NCBI RefSeq assembly: GCF_000150275.1
Contig: NW_002060945.1
Location: 8,572,011-8,636,010, forward strand
DNA from: Trichoplax adhaerens
Lineage: Eukaryota > Animalia > Placozoa
Direction of reading: 5' to 3'
DNA: 64,000 nucleotides
Position numbers and translations under genes: made by a program. Each line of letters begins with the position of its first letter. Position 1 is the first letter of the stretch. Below, piece by piece: positions 8,900 to 43,800 of this stretch. Below the pieces are notes generated by a model. It saw only the letters and a list, made by a program, of their open reading frames with translations, searched no databases and was not told the DNA's origin.

Positions 8900-11573
8900 C
8901 TACGCTATACATTTGCCTTCAAGCCAATATGTATCAATCGTAGCCTTTCCGTTATCCTATTTCAACACAACAGAATAAATTAAATAGACTAAAATTACTT
9001 AAAATAAAGTTAAAATAATAATAGACGTCTTCCAATGTGAACGCGTTTATATTTTTATATCACATTGATAAGGTAATTACGCTTATATAAATTGTAACTC
9101 TTACCAAAATGGGAATAGATTCATGATAACGCATATCATAGTCGCCATAGCTAGATAAGGCTTCATAAGTTGATTTACTAATATTTATCTTCATAGCTAA
9201 GAGGAACATACAGGTAATAATGAAGCAATTTCGCAGAATTGACATCAATTAGCAAACGAATCATCCAAATATTATATACTATTATAATTATCAGTGATAA
9301 TTTTGATTTGACTGTAAGTTAATATCAATCATGATAATCATAGATTATTATCATAGTAAAAATCAAGATTAGCAGTTAACACGCACTGGGTAGTAAAGTA
9401 CCTGAACATTTTTTCTAGTTTAAGTAAATTTCAATTTGAACTTACGACTTCCTCGTGCTTCCATCCTAGTTGCTACAGATACTGTCTGACCGAATAAGCA
9501 ATAGCGCGGCATTTTAATCCCAACTACACCAGCAACGCACGATCCTGCCGTATCAAAAAGTATATAGAAATAATTACAACATTGACCAATATAATCAACA
9601 TCTGACTTAAACATTAGTAAAAAAATTAATTCATGGTATCAAATAATCATGCACGTAGCTAAATAATAAGTAAATGGTAATGTAACTATTAAATAAAAAC
9701 AGAACTTTAAGTTGAAATATTCTTCATTATTCGCCAGTTATTAACAAGTTATGGTAAGAACAAATTAAATTATTATTTGACAGCATCATAAAATATTAAA
9801 ATTTCCTGTATTATTATGAATATCATCGGTGTAAACACAGAATTGCCTCTTAATGTAGTTCGCTACTAGATTTTTCAAGTATCTAATTTTGAATACAAAC
9901 ACTGTCGGTACCAAGAATAACAAAATGTGAACTGATATAACGTTCTCACCAGTATGGATACCAATTCTCATTTGCAATTGTTCAACAGGAACATGGGGAA
10001 TGTTAATTCGTCGCATATTAGTCAAGATTTCCATTGCCATTTGGGCAATTTCTACCGCGTGCTTTTTCTCTGCTAATCGCTTCGGAACACCAGAGGCTAC
10101 CATATACGCATCGCCAATAGTTTCCGTTTTATAGACATGATAACGATCGACAATACGATCAAATAGCGTATAAATAGCATTTAGCATATAAACTACTCGT
10201 ACCGGTGTAGTGGAATGACATATGTGTGTAAAGCCAACAATATCACTAATATATATAGTAACATCATCGAAAGCTTCAGCAATGACGACTTTACCCAATT
10301 TTAATTGTTCAGCAACAGCTGAAGGTAATAACTGATGTAACAATTGATCAGTACGATATCGGTGATATTCAATATCACTCAATCGGAGTCCAAAATAGGA
10401 CACTTGTCTCTGAATTTGTCGTTGCATACCAGTAGTCATTATAATAACTAAAACTCCAACAATTAAAGCAGCAGCCAAAACTAAAATTTGCTGACGATTA
10501 ACAACTTTAATGTCACGTACAAGTTTGTCAGTATCATTATGGATATTTTCTCTTAATTGATAGCTTAAAGTAGTTAACATCTGTAAGTATTGGGTGGTGC
10601 TATTTTTCCAATACGATAAAGACTGAACATTAGGTTGATGATGTCGATTGAACATAATTTTAGTAATTTCTTGGTTAATTATTTCTACAACAGTATTATT
10701 TAAGTGGTTTTGAAAATAATTGTTTATGAAAGAAGATAAACGCCCCGCTGATGTCAAGTATAACTGATGACGACTATTATGATATATAAAAATGAAGACT
10801 TCACTTGAATATAAATAACCGCGTGAATAATATAAATTACCAATAGCTCGACTTAGAGTAGCCTCATCTTCAGCTAAAATTAAAAAATGAATAGCTATAA
10901 GATCCTGCCAATCGAGCAATGTTGATGTAGTTTGTATCAGACGAACTTTATGTTCAGATAACAGTCCTACTGTACGGGCATAAAATTCAACTTCAAGTAA
11001 AACATTAGTTAATTTATTATCCGTTTTATTACGATGATCTTCAATTCTATGATGAATGATTTCATCTTCATCATCATCATGATCATCCAAGCTATCTTTA
11101 TGATGCTCATCCTCTTCATGGCCATTTTCAAATTTAGAATCAGTAATATTACGTTTATCCAGTACATTACTGTCATAGATATTACTAGAATAATTCGAAT
11201 TGATATACGTAATAGTAGCAGTTAACTCACTCAAGATAGCTTGAATTTTATCCACATGATCAAATAGGCTATCCACTGCTTTACGAATTGAATTAATTTG
11301 TGCAATATCTTTAGTAGAACGTCGAAAATTAGTCGCGGATAAAACAATAAAAAAGACACAGATCAACGTGGTAAATAAAATAATAATCATACTCTGCCGT
11401 CTGCTACGTTTATACTGCGATGAATCATCCTTTAAATTTCCTCTGCCGCATAATCTATGCCAAAAGCCAAGTTGATCTCGGCTCTCCGTTAAATCATAGC
11501 TTTCAACGGTATCATACCTTGTTAGCATGCTTCTCCTTCTTCTACTCGGAATAGCTCTAGTTACGAAATTCAT
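8900..11573 (-). CDS. NIT-domain-like two-TM receptor guanylate cyclase, paralog 1, 623 aa; exons 11573-9950, 9544-9446, 9196-9105, 8956-8900
   Basis: Class III cyclase motifs [26 protein letters not shown]|[18 protein letters not shown] and TYWL, with the guanine-specifying E and C. Preceded by the LLHQLLP coiled coil. Two hydrophobic helices flank a ~280-aa helical domain. All introns are GT-AG and in frame (1624+99+92+57 = 1872 nt). The NIT call comes from motif recognition, not an HMM search. Confidence 0.92.
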
Positions 11574-40800: not shown

Positions 40801-43800
40801 GTAATAAGGTAGTTGCTCCACTTGAAGGGATGGCAAGTAAAGCTAGAGATAGTTAACGTACATATACGGTAATTCCAGGCATTCTATAAGATTACTAAGA
40901 ATATTTCAATTAATATATATTACTTGCAATAGTATACTCGTAGTATTAGATAAAATCTCCGAATAATTAACAGAAGAATTTCAAAAATATAAAAGCACTC
41001 ACACTTTCCTCTCAATATATCCTTTTATCAAAAAGATTTAAAGGTTCTACTATCTATCACTAGATTGAAACTTGATAACTATCAGTTAAGACACAAAATT
41101 GAGAAAGCGCCACGTAAAATAACATGGGAATAATCTGTGTGAGTAAGGTACAATTTTAAAATAATTAAAAACACTCACGCTGTAGCATACTAACCCAAAA
41201 AAGTTTAAACAAATAATATTGGTGTGTAACTAATAGCAGGTCATATTATAATGAATCTAATGTACCAAAGAAAAATTGCTAAATGGTAATAATAGACAAG
41301 ATATGGTATTAATTTGATTACGGTAACCATTTTCAAGGGATGAGAAAATAAGTGATAATACGTGAGTCATTCACGTTTTTAATTGATTAATCAGGTATGA
41401 ATTACAATAATATTAGGCGATTTAAACAATAAATTTATGCTAATTAATTACAAGATACTGATGATAGATGATTATCAATGAAATTAAAATCTTAGTTTTT
41501 AAAAAATGTTTAAAAGCTTACGTTGACTATTAGATTCCATCTTGGAAGCTAATGTTACTGTATCGCCAAATAAACAATAACGAGGCATTTTGATACCAAC
41601 CACGCCAGCTGCACATGGACCTAAAAAAGTAGTGTATGCATGATGTTACGACGAGGAATTACAATCAAGCTGAGTTAGGATTTTTTTGTAGTCTGCAACT
41701 CTTATAGTTAAGCTTATTTTCTAACATTTGGTCGTCAATAGAAATTGCTAACAGTCGACTGATTAGTAATGCACTACTCTAGTCATGTGTACAAGTGTAG
41801 TAATGACATTTGGCTGACAATATTGAACTAGGATAAAATGATCATAAGGAGTGGAATTTGATGATAAACGAATACTATTAGGGTTTTAGGTTAATTTTTT
41901 CTTTCAATATCCAGTCACTGATTTGTCGATCAAGTATCTCAATCGTTAAAAGAACAGTCCTCTACAATGATTATAATCATTCAGAAAATCGGCTATAGCG
42001 ATACCACATAAATAAAAGTACAGAAGATAATAAAAGATCGACTGCTTCAATAAATTTCTTATAGATTAAAATAATTTAATTGACTAACTATAGCAATCAT
42101 AGAGGGCAAAAGCTAGGAGAGCATGGAGCCTGTTTATTAAATATCCTATAATTTAAAATAGTCACTAGATTAAGATCGAAATTTGTGGGCATTAAATCTA
42201 GAATTTAAATCTGCCATTCATTAATATTCGCAGCTCCTAAAATTGTGGCTGACATGTTATATTAACAAGCTAGAGTCTGGTTAAAAGTAGCTTGAAATAT
42301 ATTAGTATTATCGCTGATATTATTTAAGGTTGAAAGGATGTCTCTCTTGATAAACTATGATATTGATGCTAATTAATGCATATTTCATATTGTCGATCGT
42401 TAGTAATATAGGAATAACACAAAATCATCGATAAACATTGTAGCCTTCCCTGTCAATGGTATAATATAATTTCAATAAAACTGTATATGCATTCAGTGAT
42501 GGTATATTTGACGAAAGATTACCAATTGATGGAATCAATAAATTCATCAGCAAGGTATATTAATGAAATAGAAAATAAGTTATGAACATCTAGTCAAAGA
42601 AGGTATACGAAATTTTACTTCGATTTTGCTGTGTCATTAGTGACATTCTAGTGCTTTTTGCTCAACCTTATTTCGTTTTTAATAGGATAAATTAAGTAAT
42701 TTTAGGCAACTAAATTGACCATGGTAAAAAAATTAATTACACTGGTACTAATAAAAGAAATTAATACCGGAATGAGTAACTTTTTTTATATCTTTCCTAC
42801 GCGATGATTATTTGGAGACGAAAGTATGCCGTATTTAATTAAATTTTATTAACTTTCAAAATTGTTATGAGCATTTACGTCGATAGTTAGCGGGAAAAAT
42901 TAGAAATTATAAGAAATTCAGTAAGATCATCCATCTTATATCTGTTAGATCTTCAAGTTTTAAATACTACAGGATGCTATTCCCTGATTGCCACATTAGG
43001 ATTTATTCTAGTAACATAGAATAATTTTCTCTTAACGGAGGACCATGTTTGCCCTTCCTTGTGAGTTAAAGAATAACAAATTTTCTCAACAGCGATCTTC
43101 AAACGTAGGCGTTTAACAAATTTCTTGATGCACAATTAAATAACTCTCGATGCTATCTTTTTACATTATTTATAGCTTGAAGCTGGCTAATAATAATAAT
43201 AATTCCTAAAATGCTATTCTGATACTGTCTCACTAAAATTTATTTCAGTGATAAATCATCCCCTAACTCCAATGGAAATCTACATTTGTAGCGTTTATTG
43301 TATGACATATAAATGTCCTAACAAACTAATACTCAAAGTGCCTATTATCCCAATCATTTTACATGGAAATCCTCCAGCTCTATACGGTTAGCATTTTAAA
43401 ATATTCTAAATATGATTCTAAAATAGCTATATCCATATTGAGCAAAGCTTCAAGATTTATATATTTTCGTCTTTAAAAGCGGTCTAAACTAACCTGACTA
43501 ATTTTTCATATACAGTTAAATATGACAAAATTTAGATCAAAGTAAGCCCTAATCTTAAAAGCACAATATATCTAGTTATAATTTTACGAAACCATCGTAT
43601 TCGAATTTAGCCATAGCTTTTAGGAAGATGCTAGTTATATCTTTTAAAAAAACTATGGTTATTTCATACTATTAGATCTCTATTCCTCAAAGAATCGCAA
43701 GATAATATCAGGAGAAAATACTGTATATCTCATTTTTCTTTACATGTAAGCAGAGATTATACAAAACGTAATCCTATGTAGAACATAAATTCTAACTAGT

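What the first reader, a model, noticed from the sequence alone, without database searches (positions are those of the whole stretch)
9446..41620. None of the three cyclases has the intact catalytic N-x-x-x-R pair, suggesting sGC-alpha-like half-sites and obligate heterodimers
Seen in the 99-nt second exons, compared with the canonical FGDTVNTASRMES: paralog 1 has [13 protein letters not shown] (N->S, R kept; 9446-9544); paralog 2 has [13 protein letters not shown] (N kept, R->K; 22422-22520); paralog 3 has [13 protein letters not shown] (N->T and R->K; 41522-41620). All three keep both metal-binding Asp residues (SD..GF, GDAY) and the GTP-specificity E and C. Established: in class III cyclases one protomer supplies the two Asp residues and the other supplies the transition-state Asn/Arg; the soluble GC alpha subunit has T/K at those positions. 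Inference: these are alpha-type, specificity-conferring subunits needing a common catalytic co-receptor encoded elsewhere (combinatorial sensing), or they are weak or regulatory cyclases.
Basis: partly seen in the sequence, partly recalled or inferred. Interest (0 to 1): 0.82.

Follow-up and report, generated by a model that had tools for sequence, protein, structure and literature searches.

The report
Three NIT cyclases with degenerate half-sites
Three neighbouring Trichoplax receptor guanylyl cyclase genes (published as NIT-GCY5, 6 and 7) have each lost part of the Asn/Arg/Lys set that one subunit lends to the shared active site, yet keep the metal-binding half under strong selection. They therefore probably make cGMP well only when paired with one of eight complete paralogs, which has precedents but has not been tested.

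Summary
The three 99-nt exons lie on the minus strand at exactly the stated coordinates, with AG/GTAAG borders. They encode S/R, N/K and T/K at the Asn/Arg positions, and both metal Asp residues, Glu and Cys are kept.

The genes are the published Trichoplax adhaerens NIT domain GCY6, GCY5 and GCY7 (Moroz 2020). That paper does not discuss catalytic residues.

New findings here:
- All eight other NIT-GC paralogs in this genome keep Asn and Arg.
- The trio is a well-supported clade (99/98).
- The trio has also lost the third residue of the same face, the triphosphate Lys (L, L, Q). This gives the human sGC alpha-1 pattern.
- The substitutions persist in Hoilungia H4 (GCY5 N/K; GCY6 S/M).
- The cyclase domain is under strong purifying selection (omega 0.015 and 0.074).
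- Asn/Arg/Lys loss recurs in at least seven bilaterian NIT-GC lineages, always with the Asp pair kept.

The best reading (0.45) is alpha-like half-site subunits that need an Asn/Arg/Lys-complete partner. No complementary beta-like partner exists, and dimerisation was not tested. Weak homodimers (0.30) and non-catalytic regulators (0.17) remain open. C. elegans ODR-1/DAF-11 is a precedent.

The scan had already noted this cluster (s1-769881).

The parts
9950..11573 (-). NIT domain GCY6 (EDV27242), exon 1: N-terminus, TM1, NIT, TM2, linker helix and cyclase domain up to R-I-G-I-H-T-G
   Evidence: Open frame. Pfam NIT 38.6 bits and Guanylate_cyc 115 bits. Two hydrophobic segments. N-terminus matches the published protein. 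GT donor and phase.
9446..9544 (-). GCY6 exon 2 (99 nt): Cys kept, Asn to Ser (TCT), Arg kept (AGG)
   Evidence: The H4 orthologue P0013 has Ser and Met here.
9105..9196 (-). GCY6 exon 3 (92 nt), ending ...SIPIL where complete paralogs end ...K (triphosphate Lys position)
8900..8956 (-). GCY6 exon 4 with stop codon ([12 protein letters not shown]... in place of G-x-G-x-x-x-T-Y-W-L)
22948..24559 (-). NIT domain GCY5 (EDV27243), exon 1
   Evidence: (NIT 39.7 bits, Guanylate_cyc 108 bits).
22422..22520 (-). GCY5 exon 2 (99 nt): Asn kept (AAT), Arg to Lys (AAA)
   Evidence: Identical in the H4 orthologue P0132.
19708..19799 (-). GCY5 exon 3 (92 nt), ending ...VKCLL (Leu at the Lys position)
19058..19141 (-). 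GCY5 exon 4 with stop codon ([10 protein letters not shown]...)
47093..48827 (-). NIT domain GCY7 (EDV27244), exon 1
   Evidence: (Guanylate_cyc 120 bits; NIT only 18.6 bits, below the cut-off).
41522..41620 (-). GCY7 exon 2 (99 nt), 5.4 kb downstream of exon 1: Asn to Thr (ACA), Arg to Lys (AAG)
38218..38309 (-). GCY7 exon 3 (92 nt), ending ...EIHVQ (Gln at the Lys position). The last exon was not found.

Best explanation
GCY5, GCY6 and GCY7 are an old tandem trio of NIT-domain receptor guanylyl cyclases whose catalytic domains have become one-sided. Each chain still offers the C1/alpha-type face of a class III cyclase site: two metal-binding Asp residues and the phosphate Arg. The C2/beta-type face has lost part of its ribose, transition-state and triphosphate triad. 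Asn/Arg/Lys reads N/K/L in GCY5, S/R/L in GCY6 and T/K/Q in GCY7. A homodimer, or any dimer formed within the trio, therefore has no complete site. A dimer with one of the eight Asn/Arg/Lys-complete NIT-GC paralogs would have one complete site (trio Asp pair plus partner Asn/Arg/Lys/Glu/Cys). It would also have one degenerate pseudo-site that still carries Glu and Cys. This is the arrangement of sGC alpha/beta and of adenylyl cyclase C1/C2. What is shown here: the residue pattern, its restriction to this clade, its conservation across placozoan genera, strong purifying selection, and the existence of complete paralogs. What is inferred: heterodimerisation, which partner is used, and dependence of activity on that partner.
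For: 1. Residue pattern. The eight active-site positions follow Allerston 2013. Positions 1, 3 and 4 (Asp, Asp, Arg; alpha face) and positions 2 and 5 (Glu, Cys) are intact. Positions 6 to 8 (Asn, Arg, Lys; beta face) are degenerate. Human sGC alpha-1 aligns with T/K and lacks an alignable KGKG segment.
2. All eight other T. adhaerens NIT-GC paralogs keep Asn and Arg, and all end exon 3 with the Lys. All seven with a complete exon 1 have NIT plus cyclase domains.
3. The trio is a clade with support 99/98 inside a placozoan radiation. Each stem predates the split from the second placozoan lineage.
4. At least three separate substitution events occurred in the clade and none in its eight paralogs. 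Ser TCT is two steps from an Asn codon.
5. The state persists in Hoilungia H4: GCY5 is N/K/L. GCY6 is S/M/V, so its Arg position is free to vary.
6. These are not decaying genes. dN/dS of the cyclase part of exon 1 is 0.015 (GCY7) and 0.074 (GCY6), against 0.22-0.25 for the NIT part, at dS of about 1.3-1.5.
7. In 16 non-placozoan NIT-GC proteins with Asn/Arg substitutions, from seven lineages, the Asp pair and the position-4 Arg are never lost. The Lys is lost in 15 of the 16 Asn/Arg-degenerate rows of the tree set, which includes the placozoan trio. Simple loss of catalysis should hit the Asp residues as well.
8. Precedents exist: sGC homodimers are inactive because the residues are split between subunits, and C. 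elegans ODR-1/DAF-11 is an obligate heterodimeric receptor GC.
Against: - No NIT-GC paralog, and no other membrane GC in the genome, shows the complementary beta-type loss of a metal Asp. There is therefore no sign of a dedicated partner, and every candidate partner could work alone.
- GCY5 keeps Asn, and T. adhaerens GCY6 keeps Arg.
- The replacements are conservative (Lys for Arg, Ser or Thr for Asn). They could leave a slow but real homodimeric site.
- GCY5's whole altered face, including the remodelled Lys loop, is almost identical between Trichoplax and Hoilungia H4. This points to a selected function of that face itself, not a relaxed pseudo-site.
- The link between Asn/Arg loss and Lys loss rests on only six phylogenetically independent pairs (4 in the same direction, 0 opposite, 2 with no change; sign test p = 0.125).
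- Metal Asp residues are indispensable in any active cyclase, so their retention also fits a weakened homodimer.
- Co-expression, physical pairing and activity were not testable here.
Confidence: 0.45

Rival explanations
1. Tuned homodimers. GCY5, 6 and 7 work as ordinary homodimeric receptor cyclases with two symmetric sites. Lys, Ser or Thr partly replace Arg and Asn, giving low-turnover or low-basal-activity sensors.
For: The replacements are conservative, and the same ones recur in unrelated lineages: K at the Arg position in mussels and barnacles, S or T at the Asn position in Lingula and Liolophura. GCY5's substituted motif and remodelled Lys loop are essentially invariant between placozoan genera. 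All residues that are strictly indispensable (the Asp pair) are kept, together with the base-recognition Glu and Cys. No complementary partner is evident. From my own knowledge, unchecked here: Asn and Arg mutants of mammalian adenylyl cyclase keep roughly 1-3% of kcat (Yan et al. 1997, J Biol Chem), and mycobacterial Rv1900c is an active homodimer with non-canonical residues.
Against: Each gene has lost at least two of the three beta-face residues. In the placozoan trio the Lys replacements are not conservative (L, L, Q). GCY6's Arg position is Arg in Trichoplax and Met in Hoilungia H4, which is hard to reconcile with a working transition-state residue. The pattern matches sGC alpha-1, whose homodimer is inactive.
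Confidence: 0.3
2. Non-catalytic regulators. The cyclase homology domain is kept for dimerisation and nucleotide binding, not for turnover. The proteins would act as pseudo-cyclases. They might damp complete paralogs by replacing two-site homodimers with poorer dimers, or signal through the GTP-binding pseudo-site.
For: The beta face is degenerate. The NIT domains of the trio are the most diverged from the Pfam model, at 18.6-39.7 bits against 57-115 bits in the other paralogs. GCY6 has lost the conserved Arg of the Q-x-E-R NIT motif in three placozoan lineages. The stem branches are long. Degenerate second sites act as allosteric sites in adenylyl cyclase, and possibly in sGC.
Against: Both metal Asp residues and the phosphate Arg are invariant in every placozoan and bilaterian Asn/Arg-degenerate NIT-GC examined. 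The cyclase part of GCY7 has omega 0.015. A purely structural role would not be expected to preserve the metal ligands this strictly.
Confidence: 0.17
3. Artefact: wrong exon models, pseudogenes or assembly error, with the real transcripts carrying an intact Asn/Arg exon.
For: GCY7 has unusually long introns (5.4 and 3.2 kb) and its last exon could not be located. No RNA data could be examined here.
Against: Splice sites are canonical and phases consistent in all three genes, with no internal stops. There is only one exon-2-like sequence per gene. The published Hoilungia H4 orthologue proteins have the same junctions and substitutions. Purifying selection is strong. The genes match published gene models EDV27242-EDV27244.
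Confidence: 0.03

Closest known systems
Soluble guanylyl cyclase alpha subunit (human GUCY1A1; PDB 6jt0_A, 3uvj_A)
   Same: It keeps both metal Asp residues, the phosphate Arg, and the Glu and Cys motifs. It has Thr and Lys at the Asn and Arg positions and lacks the KGKG Lys segment. It is active only with a partner that supplies Asn, Arg and Lys.
   Different: It is not an orthologue. The trio sits inside the NIT-GC clade of membrane cyclases and has TM-NIT-TM in place of HNOB/PAS domains. The sGC partner (beta) is itself degenerate, lacking the first Asp, whereas here every candidate partner is complete. GCY5 keeps Asn and GCY6 keeps Arg.
C. elegans ODR-1/DAF-11 receptor guanylyl cyclase pair
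   Same: They are membrane receptor GCs described as an obligate heterodimer in which each monomer supplies essential catalytic residues to a single site (review PMC5225109).
   Different: They belong to a different receptor-GC subfamily, with a kinase-homology domain and no NIT domain. Their degeneracy is reported as two-sided. Their residues were not re-examined here.
NIT-domain guanylyl cyclases (Moroz et al. 2020; Platynereis NIT-GC1)
   Same: This is the same family. The three genes are the published NIT domain GCY5, 6 and 7. Platynereis NIT-GC1 makes cGMP in response to an NO donor, and this requires its NIT domain.
   Different: NIT-GC1 was active when expressed alone and is described as having a highly conserved cyclase domain. 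Its Asn and Arg residues were not checked here. Neither paper tabulates catalytic residues or considers heteromers.
Mammalian membrane adenylyl cyclase C1 domain
   Same: It supplies the two metal Asp residues and a phosphate Arg to one active site. Its own pseudo-symmetric site is degenerate and regulatory, binding forskolin.
   Different: C1 and C2 lie on one polypeptide, the substrate is ATP, and the architecture differs.
Chytrid heterodimeric rhodopsin-guanylyl cyclases (NeoR with RGC1 or RGC2)
   Same: They are sensor-diversified membrane GCs that work only as heterodimers and form two pseudo-symmetric sites.
   Different: RGC1 and RGC2 keep all the catalytic residues, so the obligate pairing is thought to come from other parts of the protein. 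They are fungal and use a rhodopsin sensor.

Membership tests
NIT-domain receptor guanylyl cyclase (NIT-GC) | NIT domain (PF08376) in the N-terminal half | tested here: met
   GCY6 scores 38.6 bits and GCY5 39.7 bits against a cut-off of 24.9. GCY7 scores only 18.6 bits, below the cut-off. GCY7 is nevertheless sister to GCY5+GCY6 with 99/98 support and is published as NIT domain GCY 7.
NIT-domain receptor guanylyl cyclase (NIT-GC) | NIT domain flanked by two transmembrane segments | tested here: met
   A 19-residue Kyte-Doolittle scan gives two strong hydrophobic segments per protein, one before and one after the NIT match. No dedicated TM predictor was run.
NIT-domain receptor guanylyl cyclase (NIT-GC) | C-terminal class III cyclase domain (PF00211) with the GTP-type Glu/Cys pair | tested here: met
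   PF00211 scores 108-120 bits on exon 1. ETIGDAY and RYCLFG are present.
NIT-domain receptor guanylyl cyclase (NIT-GC) | Groups with metazoan NIT-GCs and away from ANP-receptor-type GCs in a tree | tested here: met
   The NIT-GC clade has 100/100 support against the receptor-GC outgroups.
Self-sufficient homodimeric class III cyclase (canonical receptor GC) | All eight active-site residues on one chain (Asp, Glu, Asp, Arg, Cys, Asn, Arg, Lys) | tested here: not met
   Positions 6 to 8 read N/K/L, S/R/L and T/K/Q. Human GC-A and GC-C have N/R/K in the same alignment.
Alpha/C1-type half-site subunit of an asymmetric cyclase heterodimer | Metal Asp pair and phosphate Arg retained | tested here: met
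   These residues are invariant in the placozoan orthologues.
Alpha/C1-type half-site subunit of an asymmetric cyclase heterodimer | Own Asn/Arg/Lys face degenerate | tested here: met
   At least two of the three residues are lost in each gene. The loss is partial, because GCY5 keeps Asn and GCY6 keeps Arg.
Alpha/C1-type half-site subunit of an asymmetric cyclase heterodimer | A partner supplying Asn/Arg/Lys exists in the same genome | tested here: met
   Eight complete NIT-GC paralogs lie on contigs C1405, C1376, C1403 and C1406.
Alpha/C1-type half-site subunit of an asymmetric cyclase heterodimer | Partner is complementary-degenerate (beta-type loss of a metal Asp) | tested here: not met
   All NIT-GC and ordinary receptor-GC exons keep the first Asp. 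Only the sGC beta-like genes on C1410 lack it.
Alpha/C1-type half-site subunit of an asymmetric cyclase heterodimer | Co-expression, physical heterodimerisation, and activity only on co-expression | not testable with these tools
   No expression data, no multimer modelling and no assay were available.
sGC alpha subunit (orthology) | HNOB/PAS/coiled-coil architecture and placement in the sGC clade | tested here: not met
   The architecture is TM-NIT-TM-cyclase, with only a weak HNOBA match to the linker helix. The genes are placed among the membrane NIT-GCs.

The most novel reading that the evidence does not exclude
NIT-GCs across animals form a two-class system. One class has complete subunits. 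The other has alpha-like subunits that lost the Asn/Arg/Lys face but never the metal-binding face, and it arose independently at least six times (placozoans, mussels, barnacles, chitons, brachiopods, acorn worms, annelids). On this reading, heteromeric single-site receptors are a normal mode of the family. They would allow combinatorial sensing of NO, nitrite and nitrate, with a Glu/Cys-bearing pseudo-site acting as an allosteric GTP site. This would parallel sGC alpha/beta and adenylyl cyclase C1/C2.
Probability: 0.25. Interest if true: 0.65.

Novelty: new member of a known kind. Interest (0 to 1): 0.45.

Why it matters
NIT-GCs are a recently recognised and barely characterised family of animal NO/nitrite/nitrate-linked cGMP receptors. 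[quoted passage not shown] If a quarter of the Trichoplax set, and many bilaterian members, are half-site subunits, three things follow. Single-gene expression assays will report some of them as dead. Gene counts will overstate the number of independent sensors. The signalling unit will be a subunit combination, as in sGC and in ODR-1/DAF-11. The residue table gives a simple rule for choosing which subunits to co-express, and it supports a clean trans-complementation test. If the trio instead proves active alone, it would show that a guanylyl cyclase can work with Lys, Ser or Thr and no triphosphate Lys. That would be informative for class III cyclase mechanism.

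Tried and rejected
- Plus strand and minus-strand frame 1: not coding. The exons are on the minus strand.
- Alternative exon 2 hidden in the long GCY7 intron: none found by tblastn at E up to 10.
- A dimer within the trio restoring a full site: rejected on first principles, because Asn, Arg and Lys must come from the same chain and no trio member has all three.
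- A complementary beta-type NIT-GC lacking a metal Asp: looked for among all cyclase exons of the genome and not found.
- An ancient shared alpha-like NIT-GC subfamily. GCY6 and mussel proteins share FGQ..S, which suggested one. The trees reject it: the trio is nested in a placozoan-specific radiation and the bilaterian degenerate lineages are scattered.
- Exon 2 of GCY7 and GCY6 in a third placozoan lineage (Logan contigs L039, L040): the contigs end before exon 2.
- Full orthologue sequences from the Moroz 2020 supplement: the stored cells are truncated before the cyclase motifs.
- The last exon of GCY7 (T-Y-W-L motif): not found between 25000 and 38225.
- Papers that tabulate NIT-GC catalytic residues: none found in the searchable library.
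- The large representative protein search was not run.
- Exons were not joined. Every exon was handled by reference, and the full-length comparators were database proteins.
- No contig was taken to be human.

Full report
WHAT IS THERE. The window is an AT-rich stretch (about 30% GC) of a 105.6-Mb animal genome. Earlier notes of this scan call the genome Trichoplax adhaerens. I confirmed this: the N-termini of the three large minus-strand open frames match the T. adhaerens proteins EDV27242, EDV27243 and EDV27244. These are listed as NIT domain GCY 6, 5 and 7 in supplementary file 4 of Moroz et al. 2020 (PMC7400543).

Each gene has a long first exon that encodes TM-NIT-TM, a linker helix and the first two thirds of a class III cyclase domain (Pfam; hydropathy). 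A 99-nt exon 2 and a 92-nt exon 3 follow. For GCY6 and GCY5 there is also a short last exon.

THE OBSERVATION. The stated coordinates do not code on the plus strand or in minus-strand frame 1. Each exon is 99 nt, bounded by AG and GTAAG. Each is entered in phase 1, matching exon 1 ends of the form ACN G|GTAAG or GTGAG.

There is only one exon-2-like sequence per gene. The published Hoilungia H4 orthologue proteins P0132 and P0013 have the same junctions. At the Asn/Arg positions GCY6 has Ser/Arg, GCY5 has Asn/Lys and GCY7 has Thr/Lys. Both metal Asp residues, the Glu, the Cys and the R-I-G-I-H Arg are present in all three.

A six-frame search of the whole genome with PF00211 gave 77 exon-level matches. 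Eleven loci share the large-exon-1 plus 99-nt-exon-2 structure. This fits the twelve published placozoan NIT-GCs minus GCY3, which is found only in Hoilungia. The seven non-window loci with a complete exon 1 all have NIT plus cyclase domains.

All eight loci outside the window keep Asn and Arg and both Asp residues. The genome's sGC-like genes on contig C1410 show the classical split. The alpha-like exons have T/K or R/K. The beta-like exons have N/R but lack the first Asp. So Asn/Arg-intact NIT-GC paralogs do exist, and substitution is confined to the three genes in this window.

A THIRD DEGENERATE RESIDUE. Allerston et al. 2013 list eight active-site positions (PMC3591389). The alpha subunit supplies the Asp, Asp and Arg. 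The beta subunit supplies the residues that hold ribose and triphosphate, including R552 and K593.

In all eight complete Trichoplax paralogs exon 3 ends R-G-x-x-x-x-K and the next exon begins G-x-G-x-x-x-T-Y/F-W. In the trio the Lys position is Leu (GCY6), Leu (GCY5) and Gln (GCY7), and the R-G is also gone or altered. Alignment to human GC-A and GC-C puts these residues opposite the first Lys of KGKG or KGRG. Human sGC alpha-1 aligns with T and K at the Asn/Arg positions, and its alignment stops before this loop.

The trio therefore has the alpha-1 pattern. Positions 1 to 5 are intact and positions 6 to 8 are degenerate. The equivalence of that Lys with AC2 K1065 and sGC-beta K593 rests on sequence alignment and spacing, not on a structural superposition.

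HISTORY AND SELECTION. In a careful maximum-likelihood tree the trio and its orthologues form a clade with 99/98 support. GCY5+GCY6 has 98/93 support, and the clade sits inside a placozoan radiation of NIT-GCs with 98/94 support (quick tree). The three cyclase-coding stretches are 68-72% identical in DNA.

Arg codons in the paralogs are mostly AGA or AGG, and the Lys codons are one transition away. Ser TCT in GCY6 is two steps from an Asn codon. At least three substitution events therefore fell in this clade, and none in the eight paralogs.

In Hoilungia H4, GCY5 is again N/K with the same altered Lys loop. GCY6 is S/M, so its Arg position is unconstrained. Against exon-1 orthologues from a further placozoan lineage (Logan contigs L039 and L040), dN/dS of the cyclase part is 0.015 for GCY7 and 0.074 for GCY6. 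The NIT part gives 0.22-0.25. Synonymous sites are close to saturation, with dS of 1.1-1.5. These are working genes whose catalytic domain is strongly constrained.

BEYOND PLACOZOA. Among the database proteins returned by the word searches, 16 of 34 non-placozoan NIT-GCs have a substitution at Asn or Arg. Among non-NIT receptor GCs the figure is 7 of 84, and several of those are fragments (Fisher p = 6e-6).

The rows are not independent. They reduce to about seven lineages: Mytilus S/K, barnacles N/K, Liolophura T/R, Lingula S/R, Glandiceps N/S, Owenia N/L and Dimorphilus N/L. On the tree, the Asn/Arg-degenerate state needs at least six changes.

Lys loss goes with Asn/Arg loss in 15 of 16 degenerate rows. 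However, only six independent pairs exist (4 in the same direction, 0 opposite, 2 with no change; sign test p = 0.125). The association is suggestive, not established. In none of these sequences is a metal Asp or the position-4 Arg lost.

HOW IT MOST LIKELY WORKS. In class III cyclases the Asp pair comes from one chain and Asn, Arg, Lys and the base-recognition residues come from the other. This is established and is restated. A homodimer of any trio member lacks a complete site. So does any dimer within the trio, because no member has Asn, Arg and Lys together.

A dimer with a complete paralog would have one full site and one Glu/Cys-bearing pseudo-site. That one-sided loss under strong purifying selection, with the metal face never lost, is why I favour alpha-like half-site subunits (0.45).

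Several points count against this reading:
- There is no complementary beta-type partner.
- The replacements are conservative.
- GCY5's altered face is almost invariant between genera.
- The Asp pair would also be kept in a merely slowed homodimer.

Weak or tuned homodimers (0.30) and non-catalytic regulators (0.17) therefore stay open. An annotation artefact is unlikely (0.03).

COMPARISON WITH WHAT IS KNOWN. The genes are already published, although the papers I could search say nothing about their catalytic residues. The mechanism proposed is that of sGC alpha/beta and adenylyl cyclase C1/C2. It has a receptor-GC precedent in C. elegans ODR-1/DAF-11 (PMC5225109). Chytrid NeoR/RGC pairs show sensor-diversified heterodimeric GCs without residue complementation (PMC8815786). 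Platynereis NIT-GC1 makes cGMP when expressed alone.

The trio is not an orthologue of sGC alpha. The resemblance is convergent. What differs from the precedents is that only one side is degenerate. I file the finding as a new member of a known kind.

LIMITS. The last exon of GCY7 was not found. Exon 2 of GCY7 has no orthologue evidence outside this genome, because the only orthologous contig ends too early. Expression, pairing and activity were not testable. The bilaterian sample is the top of a similarity search, not a census.

Noticed in passing
window 9950-11573, 22948-24559, 47093-48827 (minus strand): The NIT sensor domains of the trio are the most diverged in the family. Pfam NIT scores are 38.6, 39.7 and 18.6 bits, against 57-115 bits in the seven other paralogs with a full exon 1. 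GCY6 has Leu in place of the conserved Arg of the Q-x-E-R NIT motif in all three placozoan lineages sampled, whereas GCY5 and GCY7 keep it. Sensor and catalytic face seem to have shifted together.
   Followed up: partly
window 41621-47092 and 38310-41521; 19800-22421: GCY7 has introns of 5.4 and 3.2 kb and GCY5 has one of 2.6 kb, while the corresponding GCY6 introns are 250-400 nt. No ORF of 150 aa or more lies in them. Their content was not examined. The final GCY7 exon with the T-Y-W-L motif was not found.
   Followed up: partly
L034 (G000:C1376:1-10000), about 1277-4139: A NIT-GC copy at the start of contig C1376 has a stop inside its cyclase match. It has a partial extra copy of exon 2 (1814-1879, besides 2789-2887) and two identical exon-3 copies (2141-2227 and 3211-3297). 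This may be a local duplication, a pseudogene or an assembly problem at the contig end.
   Followed up: no
G000:C1410:5379871-5429411 (L009, L017, L018, L028): A cluster of soluble-GC-like genes shows the classical split. The alpha-like exons have T/K or R/K at the Asn/Arg positions. The beta-like exons have N/R but Gly or Lys in place of the first metal Asp.
   Followed up: partly
proteins P0014-P0017, P0025, P0030, P0072 (barnacles): All barnacle NIT-GC hits have N/K, Arg at the Lys position, an insertion in the Lys loop, and Thr in place of the guanine-specifying Cys. No complete barnacle NIT-GC appeared in the sample. If that holds in a census, it argues against a NIT-GC partner in that lineage.
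   Followed up: no
window 28968-29696: Four diverged direct copies (61-74% identity to the reference copy) of a 69-nt unit, spaced 153-343 nt apart, lie in the 13.5-kb gap between GCY5 and GCY7. The nearby 161-aa ORF at 30232-30714 (plus strand) has no Pfam match.
   Followed up: no
window 60566-64000 (minus strand): An open frame of at least 1145 aa, rich in Glu, Lys and Gln and coiled-coil-like, runs off the window end. Its only Pfam match is a sub-threshold TMF_DNA_bd hit (21.3 bits, cut-off 35).
   Followed up: no
L001 (G000:C1396:341217-341762): A complete cyclase domain lies in one 687-aa open frame with no intron and has adenylyl-cyclase C1-like residues. A second cyclase domain split over three exons follows 2 kb downstream. 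This is probably one of the two-domain membrane adenylyl cyclases.
   Followed up: no
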